This document shows, piece after piece, positions 4,775-22,629 of a stretch of 64,000 nt of DNA (position 1 is its first letter; every line of letters starts with the position of its first letter). The stretch is from positions 1-64,000 of IMG/VR virus record IMGVR_UViG_3300028045_000001. One strand, 5' to 3'. The position numbers and the translations under genes are program-made. The notes beneath the pieces are model-generated. The model saw only the letters and a list, made by a program, of their open reading frames with translations, was not told where the DNA came from and did not search any database.

Positions 4775-5398
4775 ATGAAACACATCCAGGAATCATTGCC
4801 AGCCCAAGGCAAGCCTAAATTTATTTGTAGGATATGGCGTGATGGGGGAATGGTATTCTATAGGACGTTCGAATATGATGCTCAAAATAAAGAGCAGCAG
4901 AGAATTGTTGCACAAAAAACGGTTAGGGCTTTTTTAACTGACCGCAACGAAGCACATACTCTACTGAAAGGGAGCAACTTTAGAAAGTTTCGCACATCTA
5001 CATCGGCACGTAGTAAGTACGATCAAGTGGGGGTATTTCGAAGTATGGGCTCCAAGCGACGATCCCCTTCTTACTCTGGCCATATCAGTTATGACAAACT
5101 ACATATAGCGATATCGTACTCTGAGAAATTTTTTAGTGAGCCCCTTGCGTACGAACTCGCAGTGAAGACTGCTAAAATGTTAAGAGTATACTTTAGTATA
5201 AAGGACGATAGTGATGAGCATGTAGAAAAATTATGGGAGTATCAATCCTTTAAAGCAGCCCGTAAAAATTTTAGAAAAATGGAAACTAAGCAACAGGCGA
5301 TAGAAGAGATCGTGGACAAATTAGAAGAATTAATAGCCTATTGTGATGAGCGGAGGAGTAACGATGTTAAGAGTAGAGAGAAAAGTACAATTGATTGA
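4775..5398 (+). CDS. hypothetical basic protein, possibly tandem AP2-like DNA-binding domains
   Basis: GV...Y.GHI...ISYS.K....A..LA pattern resembles AP2 domains; the ORF-track start at 4586 runs through the hairpin and promoter, so the start was moved. Confidence 0.35.
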   Translation: MKHIQESLPAQGKPKFICRIWRDGGMVFYRTFEYDAQNKEQQRIVAQKTVRAFLTDRNEAHTLLKGSNFRKFRTSTSARSKYDQVGVFRSMGSKRRSPSYSGHISYDKLHIAISYSEKFFSEPLAYELAVKTAKMLRVYFSIKDDSDEHVEKLWEYQSFKAARKNFRKMETKQQAIEEIVDKLEELIAYCDERRSNDVKSREKSTID

Positions 5399-8100: not shown

Positions 8101-8253
8101 ATGACAATTCATAATGAACTTCCAGCTAAGCTATTTACAGAAGCATTTATAATGCATACTGAAAACACCTTATCGCAATTTAAAGAGATATTGGATGCTC
8201 TAAGTGAACGAATGGATGTTGTGCAGGCAAGCATGGAAAAACCGATCAGATGA
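8101..8253 (+). CDS. 50-aa paralog of the 7824 ORF, overlapping the start of the DUF285 gene
   Basis: Strong RBS (aggagg); upstream aaaataaaacttagg shared with the 7824 gene; TGA overlaps ATG at 8250. Confidence 0.55.
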
Positions 8254-10379
8254 TCTCGGACCTTTCACATAGAATGGAATTAAATGAGGAGTATATGAAA
8301 AATCAAGAAACAGTAGTGATACCAACTTACGATAGCCAAATTTTATTGCAAACTGACATGGATGCATATAAGTTAGGATGCAAATGGGCAGTGTTAATAA
8401 TCAATAGTAGCTGCGAACTAAAGTTTGAAAACGAGATAAACCGTTCCGAAGCAGACGATCTCATATCCAATACAAAAAATATTATGCTACAAATACAAAC
8501 GACAATAGATAGTTTAGGTATACAAAAAACGATTGTACAAGACAACTCACTAATGGATGAACCAGGTATCATACGCGTAGCTCTCATAGATAAAGAAGAA
8601 GGCATCGTGGACGGAGATATCCCATTATGTATAGCGATATGCTCAGATGAAGATTTAATTGAAGCAGCCGGAATGTGGCTCACTATTGTGTATCGGTTAA
8701 AGATAGGGTGTGAGATTGATTACACTAAATCCGAAAAAGAACGACTCCCACATTTTGAATACCTTGCCACAGTACGACCTGCCAATGCGACAGACAAGGA
8801 AGATTCGACAATGCCAAGTACTTATATTCTCATCGCCCATGCTGTTGCGACTGCCCCTCGGAGTGAAGAGGAACTACGTAAGCATAAAGGTTCGTTTATA
8901 ACAAAGTGGCAAGGACAAAAGATTACCTTACCGTTAGATAAATCCGGAACATATGACTTCGAAATCCATTGGGGCGACGGTGCACACGATAAAGTCATAG
9001 GGTACGATCATAGTAGAATCTCACACACATATGCCGATGGCGAGGAGGTGCATACCATAACCATTTATGGGACTGTAGAAGGATTCGGGTTTGATTATTC
9101 ACCGGGGGCAGGCGTAGCGGATATACTCGATGTACTTCAGTGGGGAGATGTCAAGTTACATAACAACGGAGCTCAGTTTGCACATTGTACAAAGTTAAAG
9201 GGATTCAGTGCTAAGGATGTTCCGGATTTATCTGATGTTACCAATATGTGCGGTATGTTCGGTAAGGCTATTTCTTTCAACCAAGATATATCTAAATGGG
9301 ATGTAAGCAGTGTTACTAATATGGAGCAGATGTTCTGTTACGCCATAGTCTTCAATCAAAACATCTCCAATTGGGATGTGAGTAATGTTACTACTATGGC
9401 TGGCATGTTTAGAGGTGCCGCATCATTCAACCAAGATATATCCAAATGGGATGTAAGCGGTGTTACTAATATGAGGGATATGTTCCATGAGGATACTTCT
9501 TTCAATCAAGCCTTATCTAACTGGGATGTTAGTAGTGTTACCAATATGAACCGCATGTTTTATATGGCTACCTGTTTCAATCAGGAGATCTCTAAGTGGG
9601 ATGTTGGAAATGTTACCGATATGGATGGCATGTTCATGTATGCTGTATCCTTCAACCAAGATATCTCCAACTGGGATGTGAGTAGTGTTACTGGTATGGG
9701 TGCGATGTTCCAGCGAGCTTCATCCTTCGATCAAGACATATCCAAATGGGATGTTAGTAATGTTACCGATATGATGGACATGTTCCGTTGCGCCATAGTC
9801 TTTAACCAAGACATATCCAAATGGGATGTTAGTAGCGTAACTGATATGCAGGATATGTTCCATGCAGCTACATCCTTTAACCAGGATATCTCTAAGTGGG
9901 ATGTAAGCAGCGTAACTGATATGGAGGATATGTTCCATTCAGCTCCATACTTCAATCAGGATGTATCTAACTGGGACGTTAGTAGTGTTACTAATATGAA
10001 CGGCATGTTCCATGAAGCTAAGGCTTTCGATCAAGATATCTCCAAATGGAATGTCGGCAGTGTAACTGATATGCACGGGATGTTCCGAGGGGCTCTTTCC
10101 TTCGATCAAGCTATCTCTAACTGGGATGTGAGTAATGTTACCAACATGAGCGGGATGTTCTATAATGCTGTTCGTTTCGACAAATGTATATATAGCTGGG
10201 ATGTAAGCAAGGTCACTAATATGAGGTGTATGTTCTATGGGGCTACCTGTTTCAACCAGGATATTTCTGAGTGGGACGTGAGTAACGTCACTAATGTACA
10301 AAGCATAGTCGGGCTTGCTCCAAGTTTTAAGCGAAATCTCCCCAATTTTAAAGATTGCGCCAATGTGATAGTTAGATAA
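8250..10379 (+). CDS. BspA/DUF285 leucine-rich-repeat protein with PKD-like domain
   Basis: FITKW...IHWGDG domain followed by 14 full 25-aa repeats of consensus FNQDISxWDVSxVTxMxxMFxxAxS. Confidence 0.9.
9274..10323 (+). repeat. 75-bp coding tandem repeat (DUF285 units)
   Basis: Recurring ttcaa(c/t)caagatat(a/c)tc..a.tgggatgt at 75-nt period; boundaries approximate. Confidence 0.8.
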
Positions 10380-11624: not shown

Positions 11625-11661
11625 TTCCACAGCTTTGATGTCTTCCAATTTTTTTCATCTA

Positions 11662-11669
11662 TATATGAC
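11662..11669 (+). promoter_or_regulatory. early promoter variant TATATGAC
   Basis: One mismatch to consensus, same T-run context, upstream of the first BTLCP gene. Confidence 0.4.
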
Positions 11670-11750
11670 TTATATGAACAACAAAGTTTCTATACCGTAC
11701 TAACGTTATCTAAATCATCTATATTTAATTTTTAAATGGAGGTCATCGAC

Positions 11751-12365
11751 ATGAAGAAGGAGTTACTGTTGGCTACAATTGCAATTGTGTGTATTTCCGG
11801 ATGTGATGTTAACCTTGATATTGGGCCTGATGAAAGCACCAGTGGAGATGTCACAAATCCATATGGCGTGCATTCTCATCGTAACGCGGCTGTTCCCAAA
11901 GCCTGGTCTAAATTCTGTGCCCGCTATAATCAACCAATTGCTTCGAAAGACTATGGAAAAAGGTTTCAGGATCTAAGGGAGATCTTTCACCCGCTATTCG
12001 ATAATTTCGATCATGTTGAAGACATAGATCATTGGGGAGTCGAAGAGCAATGGGATATCATGCCTGACGACGATCTTCGTGGGGATTGTGAGGACTTTGC
12101 ACTTACCCTAAGGGCTCGACTTATTAGAAATGGATTTCCCATGCATGATGTCCGCATTGCTACTTGTCATATATTGAGGAAAGGCAAGCCTATGCATCAC
12201 GCGGTCGCTTTGGTTGAGGTCGATAGAGGTGATGTCTATGTGGTTGATCCAAGTGGAATATATAAATTTAAAGAGTATCGAGTAGTGTCCTGGAATAAGG
12301 TATTGGATGAGAGTGGCATATATTGGGTCATGATAGATAATATCCCAGGTACAATCAAACTTTAG
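11751..12365 (+). CDS. transglutaminase-like cysteine peptidase (BTLCP/LapG-like) lipoprotein, triad intact
   Basis: Lipobox ISGC; WGVEEQW...RGDCEDFALTLR...HHAVALVE...VVD. Confidence 0.85.
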   Translation: MKKELLLATIAIVCISGCDVNLDIGPDESTSGDVTNPYGVHSHRNAAVPKAWSKFCARYNQPIASKDYGKRFQDLREIFHPLFDNFDHVEDIDHWGVEEQWDIMPDDDLRGDCEDFALTLRARLIRNGFPMHDVRIATCHILRKGKPMHHAVALVEVDRGDVYVVDPSGIYKFKEYRVVSWNKVLDESGIYWVMIDNIPGTIKL

Positions 12366-12366
12366 G

Positions 12367-12396
12367 GGTAGAGGGAGAGCATGCTCTCCCTCTACC
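12367..12396 (+). terminator. 30-bp perfect palindrome after the stop codon
   Basis: ggtagagggagagcatgctctccctctacc equals its own reverse complement. Confidence 0.7.
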
Positions 12397-12420
12397 TGAA
12401 CTCATTATTTTTTTTATTTA

Positions 12421-12428
12421 TATGTTAC
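12421..12428 (+). promoter_or_regulatory. early promoter variant TATGTTAC
   Basis: One mismatch to consensus, after palindrome and T-run. Confidence 0.4.
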
Positions 12429-12482
12429 AATCATAGTACAACGATGGTATGTGAAATTTAATTTATAGGGAGTAAAAAAAAT

Positions 12483-13520
12483 ATGGTAGCCAATATTGAA
12501 AAAATTTTAAGCACGATAGTTAGTGAATATAAATCATGGTGTCAAAAAAATAATGTTAAAGATTTTAATAATGAAGATTATAAATATTGTTTTATTGCGG
12601 ATTTTTTTAAACTTAATTCACAAGAACGACGCTTCACTGTTTTAATATCAAAGAAATGCTTAGAAGTATGTGAAGTCATACTCTATGGGGAATCTTTTGA
12701 ATATATGAAAAACGAAGAAAATTCTCTTTGGTTTTATACGGTAATAAATATGACATTCATGGAAAATTTACTTAACTGGGGTACTTCTATTCGTGTAGCA
12801 TGGTTTGAAATTGATGAGAAAGAATATTGTTTTACACATTTCACTCTTAATCTTGATATAGAATCATGGGGAGATTTTATTAAAGCGACTCGTGAATTTA
12901 CAAGAATGAGCTTAACGCCCACAGACTCAGTTGGATCTATAAATACAATTACATATGAAATGGGTTGTAGAATAGCAAAGGATATAATAAAATATTCTAA
13001 AACCAATGATTTATTATTTAAAGTAAAACAAATATTAGTGCGACTGCAGCACATAATGTTTAGCTTTAAAATAAATAAAAGATTTGTATTGACCAGCGAT
13101 AAGAACTTAAAAAATTATAATAATATAAAAATATATTTAATAGATAATACAGAACCACTTAATAGTTGTATATCGCATCTTGATCCAGATGATGTATTTA
13201 CAACGATACCACTTGACCGATTTTATTCGTTTGAAGAAGTAATTGATTCAACTACATTATGTATAAATGTATTGTCTGAAAAAGATTTAATCATTGCGTC
13301 TGGAATATATAGTTTTATTGGAAGCTGCTTATACAACGAATTTAGTATCGATTGTGTTGAAGATAGATGTATAGATGATTCTTATAAAATGCGCTTGCTG
13401 CAAAGCAAAGAAAAAAAGACACTATGTATAGAAAAGGGAGACTATGGCGAAAGGGGTCGTTTATATATAGATGATCTTGTCTATGTCACTATAGAAAATA
13501 TAGACGAAGTTAAATTTTAA
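12483..13520 (+). CDS. hypothetical protein in a visibly lower-GC segment
   Basis: N-terminal half paralogous to the next ORF (YKY.FI.D.F...KKCLEVCE.ILY..FEY.KNEEN.LW). Confidence 0.7.
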   Translation: MVANIEKILSTIVSEYKSWCQKNNVKDFNNEDYKYCFIADFFKLNSQERRFTVLISKKCLEVCEVILYGESFEYMKNEENSLWFYTVINMTFMENLLNWGTSIRVAWFEIDEKEYCFTHFTLNLDIESWGDFIKATREFTRMSLTPTDSVGSINTITYEMGCRIAKDIIKYSKTNDLLFKVKQILVRLQHIMFSFKINKRFVLTSDKNLKNYNNIKIYLIDNTEPLNSCISHLDPDDVFTTIPLDRFYSFEEVIDSTTLCINVLSEKDLIIASGIYSFIGSCLYNEFSIDCVEDRCIDDSYKMRLLQSKEKKTLCIEKGDYGERGRLYIDDLVYVTIENIDEVKF

Positions 13521-13530
13521 TCCAAGGAAA

Positions 13531-14031
13531 ATGCGTATGTCAGATAATATTAAAAAATACCTAGATGTACTAATTAAACAATATGAAGAATGGATTAAAG
13601 GTAGCGACTATTATGAGGCATGGGTTGAAGAAAATAAATATATTGAAAATTTTAATGATGTAGATTATAAATATTATTTCATTTCAGATGTTTTTGAATT
13701 TACTACATATGAAAATTACTACTCTGCATTAATGGCAAAAAAATGTCTGGAGGTATGTGAAACTATACTCTATAAGAATTTTGAATACATCAAAAATGAA
13801 GAAAATGCGCTATGGTATAACATAATAATTAATATGCCAATTTTAAATGATAAACTTAATTTAAATTCATCTATTCATGAAATACGATTTGAGATTGATG
13901 GGGGGACTAAATATGAAAGTTATTGGTTTCCATATAAATTAACTACTGAATCATGGGGAGAATTCATTAAAGCAATCCGCGAGTTTATACAAACGGAATT
14001 TTATAAACATAATGCACATATTGTAGTATAA
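13531..14031 (+). CDS. hypothetical protein, paralog of the 12483 N-terminal domain
   Basis: Shared motifs KKCLEVCE and ESWGEFIKA. Confidence 0.7.
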   Translation: MRMSDNIKKYLDVLIKQYEEWIKGSDYYEAWVEENKYIENFNDVDYKYYFISDVFEFTTYENYYSALMAKKCLEVCETILYKNFEYIKNEENALWYNIIINMPILNDKLNLNSSIHEIRFEIDGGTKYESYWFPYKLTTESWGEFIKAIREFIQTEFYKHNAHIVV

Positions 14032-14077
14032 ATGTCTTTCAATGTTTATTAGTTATATATAACTTGACTGAAAGAAG
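14031..14077 (+). repeat. 47-bp duplicated promoter cassette, copy 1
   Basis: aatgtctttcaatgtttattagttatatataacttgactgaaagaag; copy 2 at 15767-15813 differs by one base; contains TATATAAC at 14056-14063. Confidence 0.85.
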
Positions 14078-14124
14078 GAAAGTATATAACTAATAAACTT
14101 AAATACATTGGAGGACACACTATC

Positions 14125-14739
14125 ATGAAAAAGAATATCTTAAATGCAATAGTTGTAATTTTTGTAGTATTGAATATGGTTGCTTGCGATAGCTCAGCCG
14201 ATGGAGATCAATCTCGATCTGGATCTTATAACAATCAAGTATCCAGGATCAAAGCTTATGATGAGTTCTTAGAGAGAGCAGGTCACGAAGTCCCAACAGC
14301 TCCTGAAAAATCCACTGCTGATCTTCAAAGAGTTTATAATGAACTTAGAGACAACTTCACTTACATGAGCGATAAGGAACAATACAATGTAGAAGATTAT
14401 TGGACCATCATGTCAGATGACAATCTTGTTGGAGATGCCGAAGACTTTGTGTTGACTCTTCGTAAGAAACTGATGGATGATGGGTTTAGACTGGCTAATG
14501 CACGAATAGCGCGATGCTATGTCCCAAGAGAAGACAATAAGTATGACTCTAAATACGTCAGCATCAACCATACTGTGCTTCTTGTAGAAGTCGAAATGGG
14601 TAGAGTGTATGTTGTAGATTCAGATGCCCATTATGATTTTTATAACTTTCCTGTGGTAGAGTGGGCTGACATGCTTGATGAAACTGGTGACTATTGGGTC
14701 AAGTTGGATATCCCTGGAAACAGCGATCGGATGATGTAA
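14125..14739 (+). CDS. BTLCP/LapG-like lipoprotein, catalytic Cys replaced by Ala
   Basis: Lipobox MVAC; GDAEDFVLTLR in place of GDCED; NHTVLLVE...VVD. Confidence 0.8.
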   Translation: MKKNILNAIVVIFVVLNMVACDSSADGDQSRSGSYNNQVSRIKAYDEFLERAGHEVPTAPEKSTADLQRVYNELRDNFTYMSDKEQYNVEDYWTIMSDDNLVGDAEDFVLTLRKKLMDDGFRLANARIARCYVPREDNKYDSKYVSINHTVLLVEVEMGRVYVVDSDAHYDFYNFPVVEWADMLDETGDYWVKLDIPGNSDRMM

Positions 14740-14743
14740 TAAC

Positions 14744-14781
14744 TATACAGGTACTGGGCGATATCGCCCAGTACCTGTATA
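14744..14781 (+). terminator. 38-bp perfect palindrome
   Basis: tatacaggtactgggcgat|atcgcccagtacctgtata. Confidence 0.7.
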
Positions 14782-14841
14782 CAAATAAACATTATTTTTT
14801 TACCATGTACTGATGTGCCGTCTTTCAATAAACCTTGGTTA

Positions 14842-14849
14842 TATATAAC
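14842..14849 (+). promoter_or_regulatory. early promoter variant TATATAAC
   Basis: Same ggttatatataactt context as the 47-bp cassette. Confidence 0.5.
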
Positions 14850-14904
14850 TTATATGAGGAATAAAAAATTATACAATCAATTTAACTACATTGGAGGACG
14901 GACT

Positions 14905-15702
14905 ATGAAAAAGAATATATTAATTGCGATATCTACACTATTCATGATGTTTACTATGGTTGCTTGTGATGGGAGCAGTGGTGGGGGTGGTGCCTCCGGC
15001 GATGACCTATCGGATTCCGGCGAGCTCACCGGAGATCTTGGCACAGACATCATCATAGATCAATATGTTGGGAACACTACTCCGATTATATCCGTTGGTC
15101 AACCAACTGGACGAGTGCGGGCGTATGATGATTTCTTAAGAAGGGATGGGCAGGATGTTCCAGTGGCTCCGAATAAAAATTCGTTTGATCTGAAAAAAGC
15201 GCATAAGGCATTCAGAAAAAAATTCACCTACATGCACGACATAGATAAATACGGTGTAGATGAATATTGGACTATTATGCCTGATGATGATCTTGTTGGG
15301 GATTGCGAAGACTTTGCTCTAACCTTTCGTGAGAAATTAATTGAAGCTGGATTTACTCCACCAAACGTTAGGATAGCAACCTGCGTAATGCCAAATGGAT
15401 ATAGAGATAATAGCCATCAGACTTATCATGCTGTACTCATCGTAGAAGTTTTTTGGGGTGAGGTGTATGTAGTAGATTCCAAGAGATGTTTGAAGTTCGA
15501 TAGCTTTAAAGTAATAGAGTGGGATAAAGTACTTGATGAAACTGGCAACTATTGGGTCAAGATGCGCATACCTAAGGATAAAGGAAATGGCGATCCAGGT
15601 AATGATAATAAAATTGAAGAAGAGGAAACCGAGAAGGAGGACATGGAAGACGACGAACGAAAAGATGGTCCAATAGGCTATTATGATAGACACTATGCAT
15701 AA
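14905..15702 (+). CDS. BTLCP/LapG-like lipoprotein, triad intact, acidic C-terminal tail
   Basis: Lipobox MVAC; YGVDEYW...GDCEDFALTFR...YHAVLIVE...VVD; start at the ATG after ggagg. Confidence 0.85.
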   Translation: MKKNILIAISTLFMMFTMVACDGSSGGGGASGDDLSDSGELTGDLGTDIIIDQYVGNTTPIISVGQPTGRVRAYDDFLRRDGQDVPVAPNKNSFDLKKAHKAFRKKFTYMHDIDKYGVDEYWTIMPDDDLVGDCEDFALTFREKLIEAGFTPPNVRIATCVMPNGYRDNSHQTYHAVLIVEVFWGEVYVVDSKRCLKFDSFKVIEWDKVLDETGNYWVKMRIPKDKGNGDPGNDNKIEEEETEKEDMEDDERKDGPIGYYDRHYA

Positions 15703-15709
15703 TTCAATC

Positions 15710-15749
15710 CTTACATGTTGTTGACCACACTTGGTCAACAACATGTAAG
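15710..15749 (+). terminator. intergenic hairpin
   Basis: 18-bp stem, 4-nt loop, followed by T-run. Confidence 0.75.
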
Positions 15750-15766
15750 AATCATTTATTTTTTTT

Positions 15767-15813
15767 AATGTCTTTCAATGTTTATTGGTTATATATAACT
15801 TGACTGAAAGAAG
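15767..15813 (+). repeat. 47-bp duplicated promoter cassette, copy 2
   Basis: Matches 14031-14077 with one mismatch; TATATAAC at 15792-15799. Confidence 0.85.
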
Positions 15814-15852
15814 TAAAATATAAAACTAATTTAACTATATTGGAGGATGACA

Positions 15853-16470
15853 ATGAAAACAAATTTTATCAATACAATGATAATAATTACTGTAATGTTC
15901 GCTACAGCTGCATGTAAAGAAGATGCATCTATTAGTGATTATATGAATAGCGACGCCACCACAGCAGTTGAATCCATGGGTCGACCAACAAGAAGGGTTA
16001 GGGCTTATGATGACTTCTTAAAAAGAACTGGTAAGAAAGTTAATGCCATTCCAAAAAAGAACTCATTCGATCTTATACGAGTATACGACGAGCTCAGAGA
16101 TAATTTTACTTATATGCGCGACATGGAACAATACGGTGTGGAAGAATACTGGACTGTTATGTCGGACGATGATCCTGTTGGGGATTGTGAAGACTTTGCT
16201 CTAACTCTTCGTGCACGATTGATAGCCGATGGGTTCTCTCCAGTGAATGTCAGGATTGCAACTTGTTACGTACCAACCTCGTATACTAAATCCGATGATC
16301 CAGAAAAGCGACTGAATCATGCAGTTCTTATAGTTGAAATTAATAATGGCCAAGTGTATGTAGTTGATAATGGAGACCACTATAAGTTTCATGAATTTGA
16401 GGTAATTAACTGGGACCGCATGCTTGATGAGACTGGAAATTATTGGGTCAATATGAACGTGTCCAGCTAA
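15853..16470 (+). CDS. BTLCP/LapG-like lipoprotein, triad intact
   Basis: Lipobox TAAC; YGVEEYW...GDCEDFALTLR...NHAVLIVE...VVD. Confidence 0.85.
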   Translation: MKTNFINTMIIITVMFATAACKEDASISDYMNSDATTAVESMGRPTRRVRAYDDFLKRTGKKVNAIPKKNSFDLIRVYDELRDNFTYMRDMEQYGVEEYWTVMSDDDPVGDCEDFALTLRARLIADGFSPVNVRIATCYVPTSYTKSDDPEKRLNHAVLIVEINNGQVYVVDNGDHYKFHEFEVINWDRMLDETGNYWVNMNVSS

Positions 16471-16483
16471 AGATTAGACCTAA

Positions 16484-16512
16484 TGTAGGGTGGGCAATAT
16501 GCCCACCCTGTA
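16484..16512 (+). terminator. intergenic hairpin
   Basis: agggtgggca/tgcccaccct stem followed by T-run. Confidence 0.7.
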
Positions 16513-16554
16513 GTGTATTTTTTTATATTTCTATAAAACTAATTGGAGGATGTT

Positions 16555-17157
16555 ATGAAAGGGATCTTTATAAACGTGACCCTAATTGGCCTACTGCTAC
16601 TTGGACTCGCTTGCGAAGAAACAGAAGTTACCCATTCAAAAATAGGTAAGCATAATAGATGGAGGCATGCCGGGTACGATGACTTTCTTAAGACACGTGG
16701 GCAAAAAATTTTCGATAACCCAAAGAAGTTCCTTGTCGATTTTCGAAAGATATACGACGAGCTTAGAGATAATTTCACGTATATGGGTGACGAAGAACAG
16801 TATGGCAAAGAAGACTATTGGACCATTATGCCTGACGACAATCTGGTTGGGGATGATGAGGATTTTGTGCTAACCCTCAGAGAAAGATTAGTTAGTAGTG
16901 GTTTTAATAAAGCTAACGTAAGGATTGCCAGATGTTATAAACCGAGGGAGGATAATAAATATGATTCGGAGTACCTTATGTTCAATCATGTTGTGGCCCT
17001 TGTTGAAATTGAAATGGGAAGGTTGCTTGTAGCAGATACAGATGACTACTACAACTTCTATCGTTTTCCAGTAGTCAGTTGGTACGACATGCTTGATGAG
17101 ACTGGCGACTATTGGGTCAAGTTGGATATGCCAGGAAATTCGGACAAAATGGAATAA
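16555..17157 (+). CDS. BTLCP/LapG-like lipoprotein, catalytic Cys replaced by Asp
   Basis: Lipobox GLAC; GDDEDFVLTLR; shares REDNKYDS and the PGNSD.M tail with the 14125 ORF. Confidence 0.8.
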   Translation: MKGIFINVTLIGLLLLGLACEETEVTHSKIGKHNRWRHAGYDDFLKTRGQKIFDNPKKFLVDFRKIYDELRDNFTYMGDEEQYGKEDYWTIMPDDNLVGDDEDFVLTLRERLVSSGFNKANVRIARCYKPREDNKYDSEYLMFNHVVALVEIEMGRLLVADTDDYYNFYRFPVVSWYDMLDETGDYWVKLDMPGNSDKME

Positions 17158-17159
17158 CT

Positions 17160-17187
17160 ACAACGCCTGGACATGTCCAGGCGTTGT
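17160..17187 (+). terminator. 28-bp perfect palindrome
   Basis: acaacgcctggaca|tgtccaggcgttgt. Confidence 0.65.
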
Positions 17188-17219
17188 GTAACTTATTTAA
17201 ATACATTGGAGGACATGTC

Positions 17220-17861
17220 ATGAAAAATAAAATTATCAGTATGATGTTAATGGGTGCAATTGTCCTTAATGTAGTTGCATGTGTAGAAGTGACAACTACC
17301 ACAACTACTACAGCTACTGGCGAACCTATTGTAATGGGCGACTACGATATCTCAGGTAATGAAACCCCACTCGAATACATTGATCGACCTTCAAGGAGAG
17401 TTCGATTTTATGATGATTTTTTGAGAAGGACTAATAAGAAAGTTCCCTTAAGTCCTAAAAAGAATGTTGGTGATCTTAAAAAAATATATAAGAAACTTAG
17501 GTCTACTTTTACCTATGTGTCTGACATAAATCAATATGGTGTGGATGATCATTGGGTAGTTATGCCGGACAATAATCGCACAGGGGACTGTGAGGATTTT
17601 GCTTTGACTCTTCGTGAAAAGTTAATTGCAGATGGGTTTGAAAAATCCAACGTGAGATTCGCCACGTGTTACACTCCTAAAAAATATGAGGAAGATGCAA
17701 AGAACAATTACCATGCGGTCCTTATTGTTGAGTTATTTTGGGGAAAAGTGTATGTTGTGGATTATAAGTATTGTGTAGAGTTTCGTAAATTCCCTGTTGA
17801 GAAATGGGATCATGTATTAGATGAGACGGGGAAGTATTGGATCCGGATGGAGATTCGTTAA
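17220..17861 (+). CDS. BTLCP/LapG-like lipoprotein, triad intact
   Basis: Lipobox VVAC, Thr run, YGVDDHW...GDCEDFALTLR...YHAVLIVELFWG..VVD. Confidence 0.85.
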   Translation: MKNKIISMMLMGAIVLNVVACVEVTTTTTTTATGEPIVMGDYDISGNETPLEYIDRPSRRVRFYDDFLRRTNKKVPLSPKKNVGDLKKIYKKLRSTFTYVSDINQYGVDDHWVVMPDNNRTGDCEDFALTLREKLIADGFEKSNVRFATCYTPKKYEEDAKNNYHAVLIVELFWGKVYVVDYKYCVEFRKFPVEKWDHVLDETGKYWIRMEIR

Positions 17862-17906
17862 TTGTTAACGAAATAAATAATAAATTTTAAACGGGGGGTG
17901 TTTAGT

Positions 17907-18962
17907 ATGGCAGAAGAAGCGTATGAAGAAGAGCTGCATTTATTAGCCCTTATGAAAAAACTATTCACGATGGGCGTTGTTTGTTGCAGTGTTGTTTGGG
18001 CAGGATTTAATGTTTGCAGCACTGTCTGGGATTGGGGCAAGGCAAAGTATGAGACACACAAGCAACAATCCCATACTGAGAAACGGTATCTACGACGAAT
18101 GAAATCACTCGTTGCCAGCTACAATGCTCTCGAATCACAAGTTGCCAAAAACGATAGACGATTAACTGAAATTGAAGGAACGATGACCAGTAAATCCGTT
18201 GGACGAACTTCGAACTCATCTAAGGTCAAACTGTGGCCAAGTAATACTATCAGATACCACATTGATGAGAAAATTGAGGATTGGGATTTAACCCAAATGA
18301 TCGATGAGGCATTTGAAAAAATAAGTGAGAATACTTGTTTAAAATTTCATAAGCTTCCGATACTTTGGAAGGATAGGAGTAGCTTTCTGCTAATCACATT
18401 GACGGAGAGTGACGAGGACTATCCTAATGCGACATTGGGCTATTCGCAAAGAAATCAAGTTGAATTGAGTATGTATTCTGAATTTGATACTGTATACCAT
18501 GAGTTTCTACATGCACTTGGATTGCCCCATGAACACCAAAGACCTGATGCTGAAATAGTCGTTAATTTTGATAACCTTGAAGGTGATAGTACTTGGTACA
18601 GAAAATATCCAAAAGATATGTACCCATACCCTTTGGATAAATTCATCTTTGATGCTGACTCCATTATGGCATATTGCTCATATAGCGAGACAACACAACG
18701 AGGGAAGAAAACTATTAATTACGGGAGAGCGCAGGGGTCACTCAGTCCCACTCCAATTGACTACATGAAGATCAATTGTATGTACTGTGGCTCTAATCCT
18801 CCACCGAAAGAGACCCAGTGGTACATGGCACTACTGAACAGGTATTCCCATAAAGGCTCACCAAAGAAGTTGAAGGTGGTCATAGAAGGGGAAGATGGCG
18901 AACGTGATGTACTTGTCACTTTAGATGAAATGGCATCTTTTGGTAATAAAAAAGAATACTGA
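17907..18962 (+). CDS. astacin-family (M12A) zinc metalloprotease with N-terminal hydrophobic segment
   Basis: HEFLHALGLPHEHQRPD signature, Met-turn DSIMAY, WP..TIRY, conserved Cys. Confidence 0.85.
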   Translation: MAEEAYEEELHLLALMKKLFTMGVVCCSVVWAGFNVCSTVWDWGKAKYETHKQQSHTEKRYLRRMKSLVASYNALESQVAKNDRRLTEIEGTMTSKSVGRTSNSSKVKLWPSNTIRYHIDEKIEDWDLTQMIDEAFEKISENTCLKFHKLPILWKDRSSFLLITLTESDEDYPNATLGYSQRNQVELSMYSEFDTVYHEFLHALGLPHEHQRPDAEIVVNFDNLEGDSTWYRKYPKDMYPYPLDKFIFDADSIMAYCSYSETTQRGKKTINYGRAQGSLSPTPIDYMKINCMYCGSNPPPKETQWYMALLNRYSHKGSPKKLKVVIEGEDGERDVLVTLDEMASFGNKKEY

Positions 18963-19085
18963 TAGTTACATGACCGGGAAAACAGATCCTCTTGGCGGCT
19001 GGTATAGTGAAGGTATAATGGGATTTGTGAGAATAGAAGACATGATAGATTTTAGTAGGTAAATTAAAACGAAAGGAGACGTAAA

Positions 19086-20084
19086 ATGAAAAAAGGTAAA
19101 ACAACAATCAAGGGCAGTAATGCAAAAATGGCTACATTGGCAATTTGTGGGATAGTTAACATCATTTTTATTTGGACTTTTTGTAGTGCAACGGTGACTG
19201 TTGCAGAGGATGTCGCTGTAACGCACGAGGTACAAGAAGAACAAGTTCCATTTTCAATGGAAGAGCATCGTGTACGATGTCGAAAAGCTACCACTTTAGG
19301 TAGAGAGCACCTTCTGTCAAAGCCCCACACTGTGCAAGGATGGCCCGATAAGGTCATTCGATACTATATCGATAAAGACAGATTGACGGATCCATATGTT
19401 GTTGAAGAAGTAATAAATGTATTCGACGCCATAGCAGAAACCACATGTTTAGACTTCATCCGACTTGATGGACCAGAATCATACAATGTGCAGGTTAAGG
19501 TATTATTGGTAACATCCACTACAAATGGGAGGTACCCCACTTCAACATTAGGATACAATGAGATCGCGAATATAATTAGATTGCGCAATGATTCTCAAAT
19601 ATGGACTATCTATCATATGGTTTTACATGCGTTGGGTTTGACTCATGAGAACCAGCGACCCGACGCAGAGCTTCTTGTTGATATGGATAACATACAAGAA
19701 GAGTTTAAATGTAATTTTGAGAAGCTCCCTGCAAGTTGCTTTCTGTACCCAGTAGATAAGTTCATTTTTGAGGTAAGTTCCATTATGTCGTATAGGCCAT
19801 ACTCTGCCTGTAAAGATTGTAGCAAAAGAACTATCGACTACGGGCGCGAGAAGGAGGGACAACGTGAACCGACATCTATTGATTATATGAAATTGGAGTA
19901 CATTTACTGTGGACTTAATCCGCCACCTAAAGAAACCCAATGGTATTTGTCTTTTCTACATAGGTACCATAATCACTCAAAGCCTGAGGATTTGACGGTT
20001 ACAATAAAAAGTAACGGTATAACTTCATACGTTAATTTTGGTGGCATGGCGTCGCCACTCGGCGATCATGTGAAACCGGAGTAA
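19086..20084 (+). CDS. astacin-like protein lacking the catalytic Glu
   Basis: HMVLHALGLTHENQRPD (E to M), SSIMSY; shares YCG.NPPPKETQWY with the upstream paralog; N-terminal TM segment. Confidence 0.8.
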   Translation: MKKGKTTIKGSNAKMATLAICGIVNIIFIWTFCSATVTVAEDVAVTHEVQEEQVPFSMEEHRVRCRKATTLGREHLLSKPHTVQGWPDKVIRYYIDKDRLTDPYVVEEVINVFDAIAETTCLDFIRLDGPESYNVQVKVLLVTSTTNGRYPTSTLGYNEIANIIRLRNDSQIWTIYHMVLHALGLTHENQRPDAELLVDMDNIQEEFKCNFEKLPASCFLYPVDKFIFEVSSIMSYRPYSACKDCSKRTIDYGREKEGQREPTSIDYMKLEYIYCGLNPPPKETQWYLSFLHRYHNHSKPEDLTVTIKSNGITSYVNFGGMASPLGDHVKPE

Positions 20085-20180
20085 TAAAACAAGGGTTTAT
20101 TTAATCTTATCGACGAGACTGTGGATCGAATACCCACAGTCTCGTTTGTATCAGTATAAAAACTATAAGGGAGAACTGTC

Positions 20181-21470
20181 ATGAAAACAGACACTACCGC
20201 GTTCGTAACAAAGTGGGAAGGGAAACGAGTCACGTTACCATTACACAAAAATGGAACATTTGATTTTGTAGTAGACTGGGGCGACGGTGTAGCAGATCAT
20301 ATAACTGAACATGATCAAAAAGAAATTATACACGATTATGAGGATGGCCAGTTAACGCATGAAGTAGCTATATCTGGCACCATAGAAGGGTTTGGATTTA
20401 TTGTCGATGACCCACTTAGTTACACTGCCATAAATTCGCTCCCCTTTGGATCTTTTCCATTAAATAACACCGACGGCTTTGCGCAGCAGTCCAGGACCAT
20501 TGCATTAGTAAAGAAATTCACGAACTGGTGTATGGGGTTTGTCACATCCAAGCAAGCCATAGTGTCAGGACCAAAGGAAGGAAGCCAATTTATGGACTTT
20601 ATTAAGTCAGCCCAAGCTATGGCCCCAAAACCGAGCGACTGCATATTACTCGATGTCTTACAGTGGGGGGCCGTTAAGTTACACAATGGAGGGTGTCAAT
20701 TTACAGATTGTACAAAGTTAAAAGGCTTCAGTGCTAAGGATGTTCCAGATTTATCTAATGTTACTAATATGATGGGCATGTTCCTCAGAGCTACATCGTT
20801 CAATCAAGACTTATCTAAATGGGATGTGGGTAGTGTTACTGATATGAAAGATATGTTCTGTGGCGCTACTTCCTTTAACCAAAATATCTCTAAATGGGAT
20901 GTGAGTAGTGTTACTGATATGAGCGGTGCGTTCCTCAGGGCTGCATCTTTCAACCAAGACATATCTAATTGGGACGTTAGCAGTGTCACTAATATGAAAG
21001 ATATGTTCTTGGGTGCCGAAGTCTTCGATCAAGACATATCTAACTGGGATGTTGGCAAGGTTACTGATATGGCGAATATGTTTAATGGCGCTACATTATT
21101 CAATCAACCCATCTCTAACTGGAATGTTAACAGCGTCACCGATACAGCTGGGATGTTCTATGAAGCTTCATCCTTTAACCAAGACATATCCAATTGGGAC
21201 GTGGGTAGGGTAACTGACATGAGGTTTATGTTCCACAATGCCACTGCCTTCAATCAAGATATTTCTAAGTGGAATGTTGGCAGTGTTAGGAATATGGATT
21301 GTATGTTCATGTCGGCTGTATCCTTCAACCAAGATATCTCTAACTGGGATGTGAGTAGCGTAACTGCTATGGGAGGTATGTTCTATGAAGCCAGCTCATT
21401 CGATCAGAATATATCCGATTGGGATGTAATCAACACGACCAAAGGAAGTCCCATTAAACAAACAAATTAA
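20181..21470 (+). CDS. BspA/DUF285 leucine-rich-repeat protein
   Basis: FVTKWEG...VDWGDG domain, about 70-aa insertion, 8 full plus 1 partial 25-aa repeats. Confidence 0.9.
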   Translation: MKTDTTAFVTKWEGKRVTLPLHKNGTFDFVVDWGDGVADHITEHDQKEIIHDYEDGQLTHEVAISGTIEGFGFIVDDPLSYTAINSLPFGSFPLNNTDGFAQQSRTIALVKKFTNWCMGFVTSKQAIVSGPKEGSQFMDFIKSAQAMAPKPSDCILLDVLQWGAVKLHNGGCQFTDCTKLKGFSAKDVPDLSNVTNMMGMFLRATSFNQDLSKWDVGSVTDMKDMFCGATSFNQNISKWDVSSVTDMSGAFLRAASFNQDISNWDVSSVTNMKDMFLGAEVFDQDISNWDVGKVTDMANMFNGATLFNQPISNWNVNSVTDTAGMFYEASSFNQDISNWDVGRVTDMRFMFHNATAFNQDISKWNVGSVRNMDCMFMSAVSFNQDISNWDVSSVTAMGGMFYEASSFDQNISDWDVINTTKGSPIKQTN

Positions 21471-21525: not shown

Positions 21526-21552
21526 AACAACATCTCATTATTTTTTTATTTA

Positions 21553-21560
21553 TATATTAC
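21553..21560 (+). promoter_or_regulatory. early promoter motif TATATTAC
   Basis: Exact motif after T-run. Confidence 0.6.
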
Positions 21561-21651
21561 CATTACAGTATGCGACCTCCTTACTTAACCAACAATAAAT
21601 ATAATTACCTGGTTACTATCATATAAAAGGATCTTTTTATAAGGAGTATAT

Positions 21652-22086
21652 ATGATCAGTCAAGAGATAGAACCTATCATTGAATCATTTTTAGTGGTGG
21701 ATAAGGATAATAAGCAGAACGCGATATCATGTTCATTGATGCTTCATGGGAGGGTTAGTCCAGGATATCAGGATAGATACGGCTTACAGTTTAGAGGAAG
21801 ACGCGGTTATAAGCTATACAAGATGACTTGTGCAAAAACCGAATACATCTCACTGGTCCCTGACCCAAATGATGATAAATACCCAATCCATTCTGAAGAC
21901 TGTGGGAGCGACACTTGTTCAAGATTAACTTCCGGAATCTGTCCTGGCACTATCTTTGGTACATACTACACTGGTGCCGAAAGACCCAAACGAAATGAGT
22001 ATTCGGACCATCATTATCAATGCATACATCTGGATGATCAAATCCCACCTTATGATCCCCCACCAATATGCACCTGGGAAGAATAG
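21652..22086 (+). CDS. hypothetical Cys-containing protein
   Basis: RBS aaggag; no family recognised. Confidence 0.6.
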   Translation: MISQEIEPIIESFLVVDKDNKQNAISCSLMLHGRVSPGYQDRYGLQFRGRRGYKLYKMTCAKTEYISLVPDPNDDKYPIHSEDCGSDTCSRLTSGICPGTIFGTYYTGAERPKRNEYSDHHYQCIHLDDQIPPYDPPPICTWEE

Positions 22087-22095
22087 GAGATTGAA

Positions 22096-22629
22096 ATGGC
22101 TTACGGGGACATATTAAGAGTGCGCTCAAGATTCATGGTGACCAGCGAAGAAGCCCCAGAAAAGGCATCCCTTTGCCTGTTAGATGACAGGGGGCAGCTA
22201 TGGTTCGAACGTCACAATAAACATGGCAGATACTTTAGAAAAAGAATTATGGAACTATGGGATCTTCTTAGATATCTCTTTCGTGACAAAAATCTACGAA
22301 GAATACATTCGATGTACATGCTAATAAATGGGGACAATAGTAGAAAGGCGTCAGTCTGTGCATTGGATAGATCGGGAACTCTGTGGATAGAGTACTATAC
22401 TGACCATGGGAGGTTCTTTAAAAAAAGTGACTCGCTTATCTATTATATGGGGTGCAGTCAAATACAATATTATGGACTCAACAAAAGAGAACCGTGTAGA
22501 CGTAATCCTTGTATAGAAAGAGATGCACAGCATTGTGCTGGATGGATAACTGGCACAGTGGTTGATGTCAGTAAGCCATTTAGATTGCCTGCAACTTCAA
22601 AAAAATATGAGCATCAAATAGGCGACTGA
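22096..22629 (+). CDS. hypothetical protein with internal duplication
   Basis: KASLCLLDDRGQLWFE..NKHGRYFRK and KASVCALDRSGTLWIE..TDHGRFFKK. Confidence 0.65.
   Translation: MAYGDILRVRSRFMVTSEEAPEKASLCLLDDRGQLWFERHNKHGRYFRKRIMELWDLLRYLFRDKNLRRIHSMYMLINGDNSRKASVCALDRSGTLWIEYYTDHGRFFKKSDSLIYYMGCSQIQYYGLNKREPCRRNPCIERDAQHCAGWITGTVVDVSKPFRLPATSKKYEHQIGD

What the first reader, a model, noticed from the sequence alone, without database searches (positions are those of the whole stretch)
17907..20084. Tandem astacin metalloproteases, one active and one with HExxH changed to HMxxH
Seen: both carry the xxHALGLxHExQRPD signature, a Met-turn, an N-terminal hydrophobic anchor and a shared YCG.NPPPKETQWY tail. 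The second has Met at the catalytic Glu position (codon 19617-19619) but keeps all three Zn-binding His residues. Established: astacins (M12A) need this Glu and are mainly known as secreted animal and some bacterial proteases. Inference: this repeats the active+pseudo-protease pairing of the adjacent BTLCP array in an unrelated protease family.
Basis: partly seen in the sequence, partly recalled or inferred. Interest (0 to 1): 0.6.

Follow-up and report, generated by a model that had tools for sequence, protein, structure and literature searches.

The report
Phage astacin pair, one catalytically dead
An uncultivated marine jumbo phage carries two neighbouring, exported astacin-type zinc protease genes, one with an intact active site and one that has lost only the catalytic glutamate, so the second is probably a zinc-binding protein that cannot cut; it is a neat but single-lineage case.

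Summary
Window 17907-18962 (P0001, 351 aa) and 19086-20084 (P0002, 332 aa) both score about three times the Pfam Astacin cut-off. They are 43% identical, and both models fold like solved astacins (TM 0.75-0.80). P0001 has HEFLHALGLPHE. P0002 has HMVLHALGLTHE, with ATG at 19617-19619, and keeps the three His, the Met-turn Tyr and the conserved Cys pair. The Met needs two base changes from GAG. It reads identically in contigs of three seawater runs from three studies, so it is not an assembly error.

The genome is a complete 240-kb phiKZ-like jumbo phage from seawater. Only one close relative turned up in 1.84 billion representative proteins: a Glu-bearing, membrane-anchored astacin in a related phage contig from the same sample. 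No ortholog of the dead copy is known, so its persistence cannot be tested. The trio groups with small lipoprotein astacins, at least three of which lie on phage-like contigs. None was found in GenBank phages or PHROGs.

Best reading: a duplication inside the phage lineage gave an active, membrane-tethered periplasmic protease and a faster-evolving pseudo-protease. Both probably act on host envelope proteins. The adjacent BTLCP array also mixes Cys-bearing and Cys-less copies. Targets, host and any pairing remain unknown.

The parts
17907..18962 (+). Gene for P0001, 351 aa: membrane-anchored astacin with intact HExxHxxGxxHE
   Evidence: ORF and translation; Pfam Astacin 66.7 bits; AF2 model pLDDT 81, Foldseek top hits are hatching enzymes, BMP1 and astacin, TMt 0.75-0.78
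17961..18035 (+). P0001 residues 19-43: the only hydrophobic segment (LFTMGVVCCSVVWAGFNVCSTVWDW), 44% small or polar residues
   Evidence: Hydropathy and composition; modelled as a helix
18069..18176 (+). P0001 residues 55-90: long helix (possibly a coiled-coil stalk) between the anchor and the protease domain
   Evidence: DSSP on the AF2 model, H55-90, pLDDT 50-77; the relative P0003 has a stretch at the same position before its astacin domain (sequence; not modelled)
18234..18788 (+). P0001 astacin catalytic domain (residues 110-294)
   Evidence: Pfam and six-frame match; pLDDT above 90
18498..18533 (+). P0001 zinc motif HEFLHALGLPHE; Glu199 codon GAG at 18501-18503
   Evidence: Sequence; aligned to astacin HELMHAIGFYHE
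18660..18674 (+). P0001 Met-turn SIMAY (Met254, Tyr256)
   Evidence: Aligned to astacin SIMHY; columns conserved in the family
18783..18959 (+). P0001 clade-specific C-terminal extension: YCG-NPPPKETQWY, then a helix and a beta-hairpin
   Evidence: Alignments; model H301-316, E322-337, pLDDT about 70; no Pfam match
18992..19019 (+). Sigma-70-like promoter match TTGGCG-16-TATAAT in the 123-bp gap between the two genes
   Evidence: Consensus scan, 10 of 12. The scan as a whole is not enriched over shuffles, so this is weak evidence.
19086..20084 (+). Gene for P0002, 332 aa: astacin paralogue with HMxxHxxGxxHE (predicted pseudo-protease)
   Evidence: ORF and translation; Pfam Astacin 68.0 bits; AF2 model pLDDT 80, Foldseek top hits are astacins, TMt up to 0.80
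19128..19196 (+). P0002 residues 15-37: hydrophobic core of a signal peptide or anchor, preceded by a Lys-rich N-region (MKKGKTTIKGSNAK)
   Evidence: Hydropathy; sequence. Whether it is cleaved after CSA was not predicted by any tool.
19341..19910 (+). P0002 astacin domain (residues 86-275)
   Evidence: Pfam and six-frame match; pLDDT above 90
19614..19649 (+). P0002 zinc motif HMVLHALGLTHE; Met178 codon ATG at 19617-19619 in place of the general-base Glu
   Evidence: Sequence. The Glu column is 100% in 52 other astacins. The stretch is identical in contigs of three seawater runs.
19779..19793 (+). P0002 Met-turn SIMSY (Met234, Tyr236)
   Evidence: Alignments
19905..20081 (+). P0002 C-terminal extension homologous to that of P0001
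   Evidence: Alignments; model H282-295, E304-317
20108..20150 (+). Strong hairpin followed by UUUGU after the P0002 stop codon: likely intrinsic terminator
   Evidence: RNA fold -23 kcal/mol, z = -5.8, 0 of 200 shuffles as stable
11736..17861 (+). Context: six BTLCP (Peptidase_C93) lipoprotein paralogues. Four have the GDCEDF Cys; two have Ala (14125-14739) or Asp (16552-17157) there.
   Evidence: Pfam; paralogue clustering; alignment; profile match to the LapG-type chain 4u65_E, GDCEDYA
20181..21470 (+). Context: DUF285 repeat protein, one of five in the genome
   Evidence: Pfam 333 bits; paralogues; 75-nt repeat units

Best explanation
The two genes are paralogues of the astacin (MEROPS M12A) family carried as accessory genes by an uncultivated marine phiKZ-like jumbo phage. 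They most likely arose by tandem duplication inside this phage lineage. Both products are exported across the host inner membrane. P0001 stays tethered by an N-terminal anchor on a helical stalk, with a complete astacin active site facing the periplasm, and is predicted to be a working zinc endopeptidase. P0002 is exported by a signal peptide or anchor and keeps the fold and all zinc ligands, but has Met where the general-base Glu should be. It is therefore predicted to bind zinc, and probably peptide ligands, without cutting. I infer that both act on host cell-envelope proteins during infection, alongside the adjacent lipoprotein BTLCP proteases. The active copies would remove or trim surface or periplasmic proteins such as receptors or adhesins. 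The dead copies would bind the same kind of targets, or host inhibitors or regulators, without turnover. Shown here: family membership, motifs, fold, export signals, duplication and the reality of the Met codon. Inferred: activity, inactivity, location and targets.
For: Family and fold: Pfam Astacin 66.7 and 68 bits against a 22.5 cut-off; sequence match to crayfish astacin, meprin and myroilysin, with zinc motif and Met-turn in register; AF2 models with pLDDT above 90 in the domain and Foldseek TMt 0.75-0.80 to astacin, BMP1 and hatching enzymes.

Specific loss: P0002 keeps 31 of 45 family-conserved positions, against 34 for P0001 and 27 for the Glu-bearing relative P0003. The Glu is its only deviation among the fully invariant columns of the zinc motif and Met-turn.

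Not an error: GAG to ATG needs two substitutions. Contigs from the source run and two other seawater runs of different studies cover 19617-19619 with no differences.

Export: each protein has one N-terminal hydrophobic segment. The Cys pair equivalent to astacin's Cys42-Cys198 disulfide is conserved in P0001, P0002 and P0003. P0003 has about 240 aa, then a transmembrane segment, then a stretch that may be a stalk, then the astacin domain. Related small astacins begin with lipoprotein signals.

Phage origin: G000 is a 239,960-bp record with terminal repeats, estimated 100% complete, with a split RNA polymerase beta subunit, DNA polymerase and helicase.

Duplication in the lineage: P0001, P0002 and P0003 form a clade with 100/97 support. 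P0001 and P0002 are sisters at 91/69. The end branches are 0.75 for P0001 and 1.41 for P0002.

Gene integrity: P0002 has its own AGGAG ribosome-binding site, a promoter-like site upstream and a strong hairpin downstream.

Parallel: the adjacent BTLCP array mixes Cys-bearing and Cys-less copies.

Known precedent: the M12 pseudo-peptidases ADAM7 (HQLGH) and ADAM29 (HHLGH) keep the His residues and lose the Glu (PMC11266112).
Against: No activity, zinc content, localisation or expression data exist, and no RNA run holds the stretch. The host is unknown; the nearest bacterial BTLCPs are at most about 40% identical over the main aligned segments and come from many Pseudomonadota. The dead state is seen in one phage lineage only. 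The three runs carry the identical sequence, so they add no evolutionary depth. The order of branching within the trio is not resolved (AU p 0.23 and 0.29 for the alternatives). No propeptide with an astacin-type aspartate switch could be recognised; the region before each domain is modelled at low confidence. The longer branch of P0002 fits relaxed constraint as well as it fits a new function.
Confidence: 0.5

Rival explanations
1. P0002 is a decaying duplicate. The Glu was lost by drift after duplication and the gene has no function of its own.
For: It is known from a single lineage. Its end branch is about 1.9 times that of P0001. This phage is full of tandem paralogue families, so spare copies are common.
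Against: It is a 332-codon open frame with its own ribosome-binding site and terminator-like hairpin. All other zinc-site and Met-turn residues are kept, and it retains more family-conserved positions than the Glu-bearing relative P0003 (31 against 27 of 45). The domain is modelled at pLDDT above 90. At 43% identity the duplication is old, yet the frame has stayed open.
Confidence: 0.22
2. The two proteins form a heteromer in which the dead copy regulates, positions or inhibits the active one.
For: They are adjacent paralogues with a shared clade-specific C-terminal extension of a helix plus a hairpin, which could be a contact element. Pseudo-enzymes often regulate their active relatives (PMC11266112).
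Against: There is no positive evidence. The related phage contig carries a single astacin with the same tail and no second copy within its 26 kb. So the tail does not need a dead partner.
Confidence: 0.12
3. The astacins serve lysis or release rather than envelope remodelling. P0001's weakly hydrophobic anchor, rich in Gly, Ser, Thr and Cys, would behave like a signal-anchor-release segment. When the membrane depolarises, the protease would be freed to cut envelope tethers.
For: The P0001 anchor is 44% small or polar residues and its hydropathy is only 1.88. This resembles signal-anchor-release (SAR) endolysin anchors (my own knowledge, not tested here).
Against: No holin, endolysin or spanin was identified next to the genes; the neighbours are BTLCPs and a DUF285 protein. 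P0003's anchor is strongly hydrophobic (2.31). No astacin is known to act in phage lysis.
Confidence: 0.08
4. The genes are nutrient-acquisition accessory genes: secreted proteases that digest external protein to feed the infected cell.
For: Many bacterial astacins and other metzincins are secreted digestive enzymes (established knowledge). The setting is seawater.
Against: P0001 and P0003 are membrane-tethered rather than free. A catalytically dead copy gives no nutritional gain. The neighbouring BTLCP family is known for specific cleavage of surface adhesins, not for bulk digestion.
Confidence: 0.08

Closest known systems
Crayfish astacin and the M12A family (BMP1/tolloid, meprins, fish hatching enzymes)
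   Same: Same Pfam family, same fold (TMt 0.75-0.80), HExxHxxGxxHE zinc motif, SxMxY Met-turn with the Tyr ligand, and Cys at the positions of the Cys42-Cys198 disulfide.
   Different: These are phage-encoded and have an N-terminal membrane anchor or signal instead of a secreted zymogen with a recognisable aspartate-switch propeptide. RxDRD is replaced by RPDAE, and the Met-turn His by Ala or Ser. There is a roughly 55-aa clade-specific C-terminal extension with no Pfam match. One copy lacks the catalytic Glu.
Small lipoprotein astacins of uncultivated phages (for example P0006, P0009, P0020; IMG/VR loci L014-L022)
   Same: They are the nearest larger group in the tree. The three spot-checked sit on contigs with phage genes: terminase and thymidylate synthase (P0009), a faint terminase match with DNA polymerase A (P0006), and a portal protein (P0020). 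A one-pattern IMG/VR scan gave 14 viral contigs. All carry export signals.
   Different: They are 205-230 aa with a lipobox Cys, no stalk, no C-terminal extension and no terminal Cys. Every one examined keeps HExxH. Identity to the window proteins is only about 25-31%.
Bacterial astacins: myroilysin (PDB 5czw, 5zjk) and flavastacin-type proteins
   Same: They are prokaryotic M12A members. Myroilysin is matched by sequence (E 0.005) and by fold. Flavastacin-like clusters appear in the Atlas structure search.
   Different: They are weaker matches than the animal astacins (TMt 0.51-0.68). They are chromosomal, secreted and active enzymes with other accessory domains.
M12 pseudo-peptidases ADAM7 (HQLGH) and ADAM29 (HHLGH)
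   Same: The defect is the same kind: the general-base Glu of HExxH is replaced while the three zinc-binding His and the Met-turn stay (PMC11266112 Table 2).
   Different: They belong to the M12B adamalysin subfamily, are eukaryotic and multidomain, and have roles in cell adhesion. There is no homology beyond the metzincin core.
Tandem-domain animal astacins with one Glu-less domain (for example Trichuris trichiura nas-4-like CDW52714.1: HQLMH plus HELLH)
   Same: They are a natural combination of a Glu-less and a Glu-bearing astacin module in the same family.
   Different: The two modules are fused in one eukaryotic polypeptide. The replacements are Gln, Leu, Ile or His, not Met. This is an unrelated lineage.
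LapG-type BTLCP proteases (the neighbouring array)
   Same: They are periplasmic, exported proteases encoded side by side with the astacins, and they show the same mix of intact and nucleophile-less copies.
   Different: This is an unrelated fold and mechanism (Cys-His-Asp). BTLCP has already been reported as a frequent viral accessory gene (PMC11283719). Astacin has not.

Membership tests
Astacin family (MEROPS M12A, Pfam PF01400) | Significant full-length match to the family profile | tested here: met
   66.7 bits (P0001) and 68.0 bits (P0002) against a cut-off of 22.5, profile positions 2-188 of 189
Astacin family (MEROPS M12A, Pfam PF01400) | Zinc-binding consensus HExxHxxGxxH with three His ligands | tested here: met
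   The three His and the Gly are present in both: H198/H202/H208 and H177/H181/H187
Astacin family (MEROPS M12A, Pfam PF01400) | General-base Glu directly after the first His (needed for an active peptidase) | tested here: not met
   Met in P0001 (E199, GAG 18501-18503). Not met in P0002 (M178, ATG 19617-19619). P0002 is therefore a family homologue but not a predicted peptidase.
Astacin family (MEROPS M12A, Pfam PF01400) | Family-specific Glu after the third His (HExxHxxGxxHE) | tested here: met
   E209 and E188
Astacin family (MEROPS M12A, Pfam PF01400) | Met-turn SxMxY with the Tyr fifth ligand | tested here: met
   SIMAY 252-256 and SIMSY 232-236, aligned to astacin SIMHY
Astacin family (MEROPS M12A, Pfam PF01400) | Astacin catalytic-domain fold | tested here: met
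   Foldseek E 1e-11 to 1e-13 and TMt 0.75-0.80 to 1ast, 3edg, 3lqb and 3vtg for both models
Astacin family (MEROPS M12A, Pfam PF01400) | Conserved disulfide between the N-terminal subdomain and the C-terminal end (astacin Cys42-Cys198) | tested here: inconclusive
   Cys residues are present at both aligned positions in P0001, P0002 and P0003 (TCL... and ...YCG). Bond formation cannot be tested here.
Astacin family (MEROPS M12A, Pfam PF01400) | Zymogen with an N-terminal propeptide that blocks the zinc (aspartate switch) | tested here: inconclusive
   The regions before the domains (P0001 91-109, P0002 38-85) are modelled at pLDDT below 60 and show no recognisable FxGD-type motif
Astacin family (MEROPS M12A, Pfam PF01400) | Zinc-dependent endopeptidase activity | not testable with these tools
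   Needs a protein assay
Metallopeptidase pseudo-enzymes (non-peptidase homologues) | Loss of a residue essential for catalysis with the fold retained | tested here: met
   For P0002: Glu to Met at a column that is 100% Glu in 52 relatives, with 31 of 45 conserved positions kept and a confident astacin model
Metallopeptidase pseudo-enzymes (non-peptidase homologues) | Retention under selection, i.e. conserved in orthologs | tested here: inconclusive
   No ortholog exists in 5.8 billion clusters, 1.84 billion representatives, IMG/VR or JGI metagenome contigs

The most novel reading that the evidence does not exclude
The phage deliberately keeps catalytically dead copies of two unrelated exported protease families: astacin HMxxH, and BTLCP with Cys changed to Ala or Asp. 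These would work as non-cutting binders in the host periplasm. Possible roles are substrate traps that mask a receptor or adhesin, decoys that soak up host protease inhibitors, or decoys that titrate a host regulator such as a LapD-type receptor. That would make 'pseudo-protease decoys' a phage strategy for controlling the host cell surface.
Probability: 0.15. Interest if true: 0.7.

Novelty: new member of a known kind. Interest (0 to 1): 0.42.

Why it matters
Astacins are textbook animal and bacterial secreted proteases. I found no paper describing one in a phage. No PHROG family matched, no copy turned up in 50,697 GenBank phage records, and no phage astacin appeared in the viral structure library. 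Yet they recur on viral metagenomic contigs.

This suggests an overlooked class of exported phage accessory proteins that probably edit the host envelope. The jumbo-phage pair adds a natural 'active versus dead' contrast within one genome. It is mirrored by the neighbouring BTLCP genes, which gives a concrete handle on what phage pseudo-proteases do.

The limits are serious. There is one lineage, no known host and no expression data.

Tried and rejected
- **Close relatives of P0002 or P0001.** The word-index search found only the two proteins themselves. IMG/VR scans with P0002 and with the three-sequence profile found nothing. The JGI metagenome scan returned only the window's own contig plus distant astacins.
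- **Relatives of P0003.** The word search for residues 330-614 found only P0003 itself.
- **GenBank phages.** tblastn of P0002, P0001 and the small phage astacin P0009 gave no match. Megablast of the locus gave no match.
- **PHROGs.** No family matched either protein.
- **Heteromer test.** Complex prediction on P0001 95-351 with P0002 68-332 gave 'no answer' (score 0.00, controls not run). This is evidence neither for nor against binding.
- **N-terminal 245 aa of P0003 and the C-terminal tails.** No Pfam family and no Atlas lead.
- **Host inference.** Relatives cannot be drawn for a virus record. There are no tRNAs in the window. The nearest bacterial BTLCPs are diverse Pseudomonadota, mostly Alphaproteobacteria, at 40% identity or less over the main aligned segments, so no host can be named.
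- **Branching order inside the trio.** Not resolved. AU tests do not reject P0003 as sister of either copy.
- **dN/dS between the two copies.** Not attempted. At 43% protein identity the synonymous sites are saturated.
- **phmmer of one BTLCP against the PDB.** Nothing. The six-sequence profile was needed.
Full report
**What is there**

The finding covers two + strand genes. P0001 is window 17907-18962, 351 aa. P0002 is window 19086-20084, 332 aa. For P0001 the ATG at 17907 is the better start. The GTG at 17898 lies directly on the GGGGG ribosome-binding site. P0002 has an AGGAG about 9 nt upstream of its start.

Both proteins match Pfam Astacin (PF01400) over the whole profile, at 66.7 and 68.0 bits against a cut-off of 22.5. 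A six-frame search of the whole genome finds exactly these two astacin places. They are 43% identical over 242 residues.

A sequence search of the PDB returns crayfish astacin, meprin beta, tolloid-like 1 and myroilysin. The zinc motif and the Met-turn are in register in those alignments.

AlphaFold2 models were built on a 55-sequence alignment. Both give pLDDT above 90 across the catalytic domain. Foldseek places both next to astacin, BMP1, LAST-MAM and fish hatching enzymes, with TM-scores of 0.75-0.80 normalised to the solved chain.

**The active-site difference**

- P0001 reads HEFLHALGLPHE.
- The Glu codon in P0001 is GAG at 18501-18503. The difference is therefore at least two substitutions, not a single-base slip.
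- In an alignment with 52 other astacins the Glu column is 100% Glu.
- P0002 keeps 31 of the 45 positions that are conserved in at least 60% of those relatives. P0001 keeps 34, and the Glu-bearing relative P0003 keeps 27. P0002 is therefore not generally degenerate. It has lost the catalytic base specifically. It keeps the three His, the Glu after the third His, the Met-turn Met and Tyr, and the Cys pair at the positions of astacin's Cys42-Cys198.
- From established metzincin chemistry, this Glu polarises the zinc-bound water. Replacing it abolishes, or reduces by orders of magnitude, peptide hydrolysis while leaving metal binding intact. The inactivity of P0002 is inferred from that. It was not measured.

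**Is the Met real?**

The stretch is held by six seawater metagenome runs. Contigs were laid from four of them. The source run covers 17800-20200 at word depth of about 79. A second run from another study covers 19112-20200. A third covers 19480-19740. None shows a single difference. So the codon is not an assembly or sequencing artefact. However, all three carry the same sequence, so they say nothing about how long the state has persisted.

**Genome context**

The window is the first 64 kb of a 239,960-bp IMG/VR virus record with terminal repeats, estimated complete. It encodes:

- a split multisubunit RNA polymerase beta subunit, about 32% identical to those of phiKZ-like Pseudomonas phages;
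- a DNA polymerase and a helicase;
- a GroEL-like protein.

This is a distant phiKZ-like jumbo phage from seawater. The genome is rich in tandem paralogue families.

Directly upstream of the astacins lie five BTLCP (Peptidase_C93) genes, and a sixth sits at 11736-12365. All six begin with lipoprotein-type signals. A profile of the six matches the solved LapG-type chains 4u65_E and 4fgo_A, with GDCEDF aligned to GDCEDYA. Four copies keep that Cys. The copy at 14125-14739 has Ala and the copy at 16552-17157 has Asp. All keep the His and most keep the Asp context.

Downstream lies a DUF285 repeat protein, one of five in the genome.

The 45-bp gap between the last BTLCP and P0001 has no terminator. 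The 123-bp gap between the two astacins holds a sigma-70-like match. That scan is not enriched over shuffles, so it is weak evidence. A strong hairpin follows P0002 (-23 kcal/mol, z -5.8).

**Architecture and location**

- Each protein has one hydrophobic segment, at the N-terminus.
- P0001 has an acidic N-terminus, then KK, then a weakly hydrophobic segment (residues 19-43, 44% small or polar residues). After that comes a long helix to about residue 90, then the protease domain, then a roughly 55-aa extension. The extension runs YCG-NPPPKETQWY, a helix, then a beta-hairpin.
- P0002 has a Lys-rich N-region, a hydrophobic core and a possible cleavage site after CSA. It then has a low-confidence linker, the domain and the same extension.
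- The extension has no Pfam match.
- The conserved Cys pair, the export signals and the architecture of P0003 (below) all point to the periplasmic side of the inner membrane. This is inference.

**Relatives**

The word-index search of 5.8 billion clusters found only the two proteins themselves. IMG/VR scans found nothing close.

An exhaustive HMM search of 1.84 billion representatives gave 3,102 astacins at E up to 0.001, but only one close relative. This is P0003: 614 aa, 127 bits, against 505-541 bits for the two window proteins.

P0003 has HELGH, the same YCG-x-x-PPPK-x-x-QW extension, and a transmembrane segment at about 243-273 followed by a stretch that may be a stalk. It also has an unassignable N-terminal region of about 240 aa.

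P0003 lies on a 26-kb contig of the same JGI seawater metagenome as the window's genome. That contig shares several other genes with the window's genome, including DUF285 proteins at about 60% identity and a YAcAr protein at 73%. It is therefore a fragment of a related phage. It carries one astacin only.

In a careful maximum-likelihood tree the three form a clade with 100/97 support. P0001 and P0002 are sisters at 91/69. The alternative arrangements are not rejected (AU p 0.23 and 0.29). The end branch of P0002 is 1.41, against 0.75 for P0001.

The best reading is a duplication within this phage lineage, followed by faster change in the copy that lost Glu. No ortholog of P0002 is known.

**A wider set of phage astacins**

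The trio groups with small astacins of about 205-230 aa that begin with lipoprotein signals. Three that I spot-checked lie on contigs with phage genes:

- P0009: terminase, GP3 packaging protein and thymidylate synthase;
- P0006: a faint terminase match, DNA polymerase A and Toprim;
- P0020: a portal protein and an intein-bearing large gene.

A one-pattern scan of IMG/VR with their profile returned 14 viral contigs of 13-100 kb. One of these (L016) holds two astacin genes. All 15 astacin genes on these viral contigs read HExxH.

Among the top 150 representatives, Glu is replaced only in tandem-domain proteins. One is a Trichuris nas-4-like protein with HQLMH plus HELLH. The others (P0021, P0038, P0042, P0043) were not identified.

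By contrast, nothing was found in the following:

- PHROGs;
- 50,697 GenBank phage records;
- the BFVD viral structure library, where the only astacin-like hit is a sandfly reovirus entry and phage hits are weak matrixin-like ones;
- two full-text literature searches for astacin with phage terms.

BTLCP, on the other hand, has already been reported as the most frequent viral accessory gene in a river-virus study (PMC11283719).

**How it most likely works**

- *Shown:* two intact, diverged astacin paralogues with export signals in a complete phage genome; one with a full active site, one lacking only the general base; the codon is real.
- *Inferred, fairly safe:* P0001 is a membrane-tethered periplasmic zinc endopeptidase. 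P0002 binds zinc but does not cut.
- *Inferred, speculative:* together with the lipoprotein BTLCPs, they edit host envelope proteins during infection. This could mean shedding a receptor or adhesin, to block superinfection or to free the cell from particles. The dead copies would act as non-cutting binders.
- The review of metallopeptidase pseudo-enzymes gives direct precedents for Glu-less, His-retaining M12 members (ADAM7, ADAM29) that work through protein binding.
- *Rivals:* a decaying duplicate, a regulatory heteromer, a lysis role through a release-prone anchor, and nutrient scavenging. The complex prediction gave no verdict and is not used either way.

**Verdict**

The proteins are members of a known family (astacin) in a setting where that family has not been described. 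One of them is a pseudo-enzyme of a kind that is already known.

Interest is moderate. The phage context and the twofold active/dead pattern are suggestive. The case rests on one uncultivated lineage with no host, no expression data and no orthologs.

Noticed in passing
window 11736-17861: There are six BTLCP (LapG-like, Peptidase_C93) lipoprotein paralogues. Two lack the catalytic Cys (Ala in 14125-14739, Asp in 16552-17157), and these two resemble each other most closely, so the dead form was itself duplicated. A Cys-less LapG-like protein might compete for a LapD-type receptor; this is speculation and was not tested.
   Followed up: partly
window 14031-14094, 15767-15830 (94% identical), 11637-11700; also 14083-14115, 14866-14898, 15815-15847, 17181-17213: Conserved upstream elements sit in front of the BTLCP genes (GTCTTTCAATGTTTATTrGTTATATATAACTTGACTGAAAGAAG, and ...AAATACATTGGAGGA at the ribosome-binding site). 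Hairpin terminators follow three of the genes (15710-15749, 16484-16512, 17159-17188). This suggests each copy was duplicated together with its own control region.
   Followed up: partly
window 12409-12438 and 21541-21570; genome-wide: A T-run followed by TATAT[G/A]TTAC lies upstream of the genes at 12483 and 21652. The octamer TATATTAC occurs 39 times on the + strand and 11 times on the - strand of the 240-kb genome. It may be a phage promoter; it resembles phiKZ early promoters as I recall them. It is absent directly upstream of the astacins.
   Followed up: no
window 8250-10379, 20181-21470, 62864-63955; genome 149128-151377, 152697-153848: Five DUF285 repeat proteins are built of 25-aa (75-nt) units. 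About 60%-identical copies occur in the related phage contig L003 (7071-8135).
   Followed up: no
L003 10001-11845 (JGI Ga0233414_10000197): This is the only close relative of the astacin pair. It is a 614-aa protein with an unassignable N-terminal region of about 240 aa, then a transmembrane segment, a possible stalk, an astacin domain (HELGH) and the same PPPK-QW tail. It lies in a related phage fragment from the same seawater sample.
   Followed up: partly
L016 about 5001-5642 (+) and about 9322 (-) (IMGVR_UViG_3300035670_000085, 99.9 kb): A different viral contig carries two small lipoprotein astacin genes about 4 kb apart on opposite strands. Both have HExxH.
   Followed up: no
proteins P0004, P0021, P0038, P0042, P0043: These are tandem-domain astacins in which one domain has Gln, Leu, Ile or His in place of the catalytic Glu. 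P0004 is from Trichuris trichiura; the others are unidentified. They are natural active-plus-dead combinations within one polypeptide.
   Followed up: no
window 21652-22086 and 22096-22629; 12483-13520 and 13531-14031: The first two are adjacent Cys-rich ORFs without any Pfam match. The second two are an adjacent paralogous pair; the one scanned, 13531-14031, also had no Pfam match. Their function is unknown. They flank the protease cluster.
   Followed up: no
window 43196-45010 (-), 58855-60078 (+), 29564-32437 (-): These are a GroEL-like chaperonin, a split RNA polymerase beta subunit (about 32% identical to phiKZ-like phages) and a 957-aa protein of phrog_3248. They mark the genome as a distant phiKZ-like jumbo phage.
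   Followed up: partly
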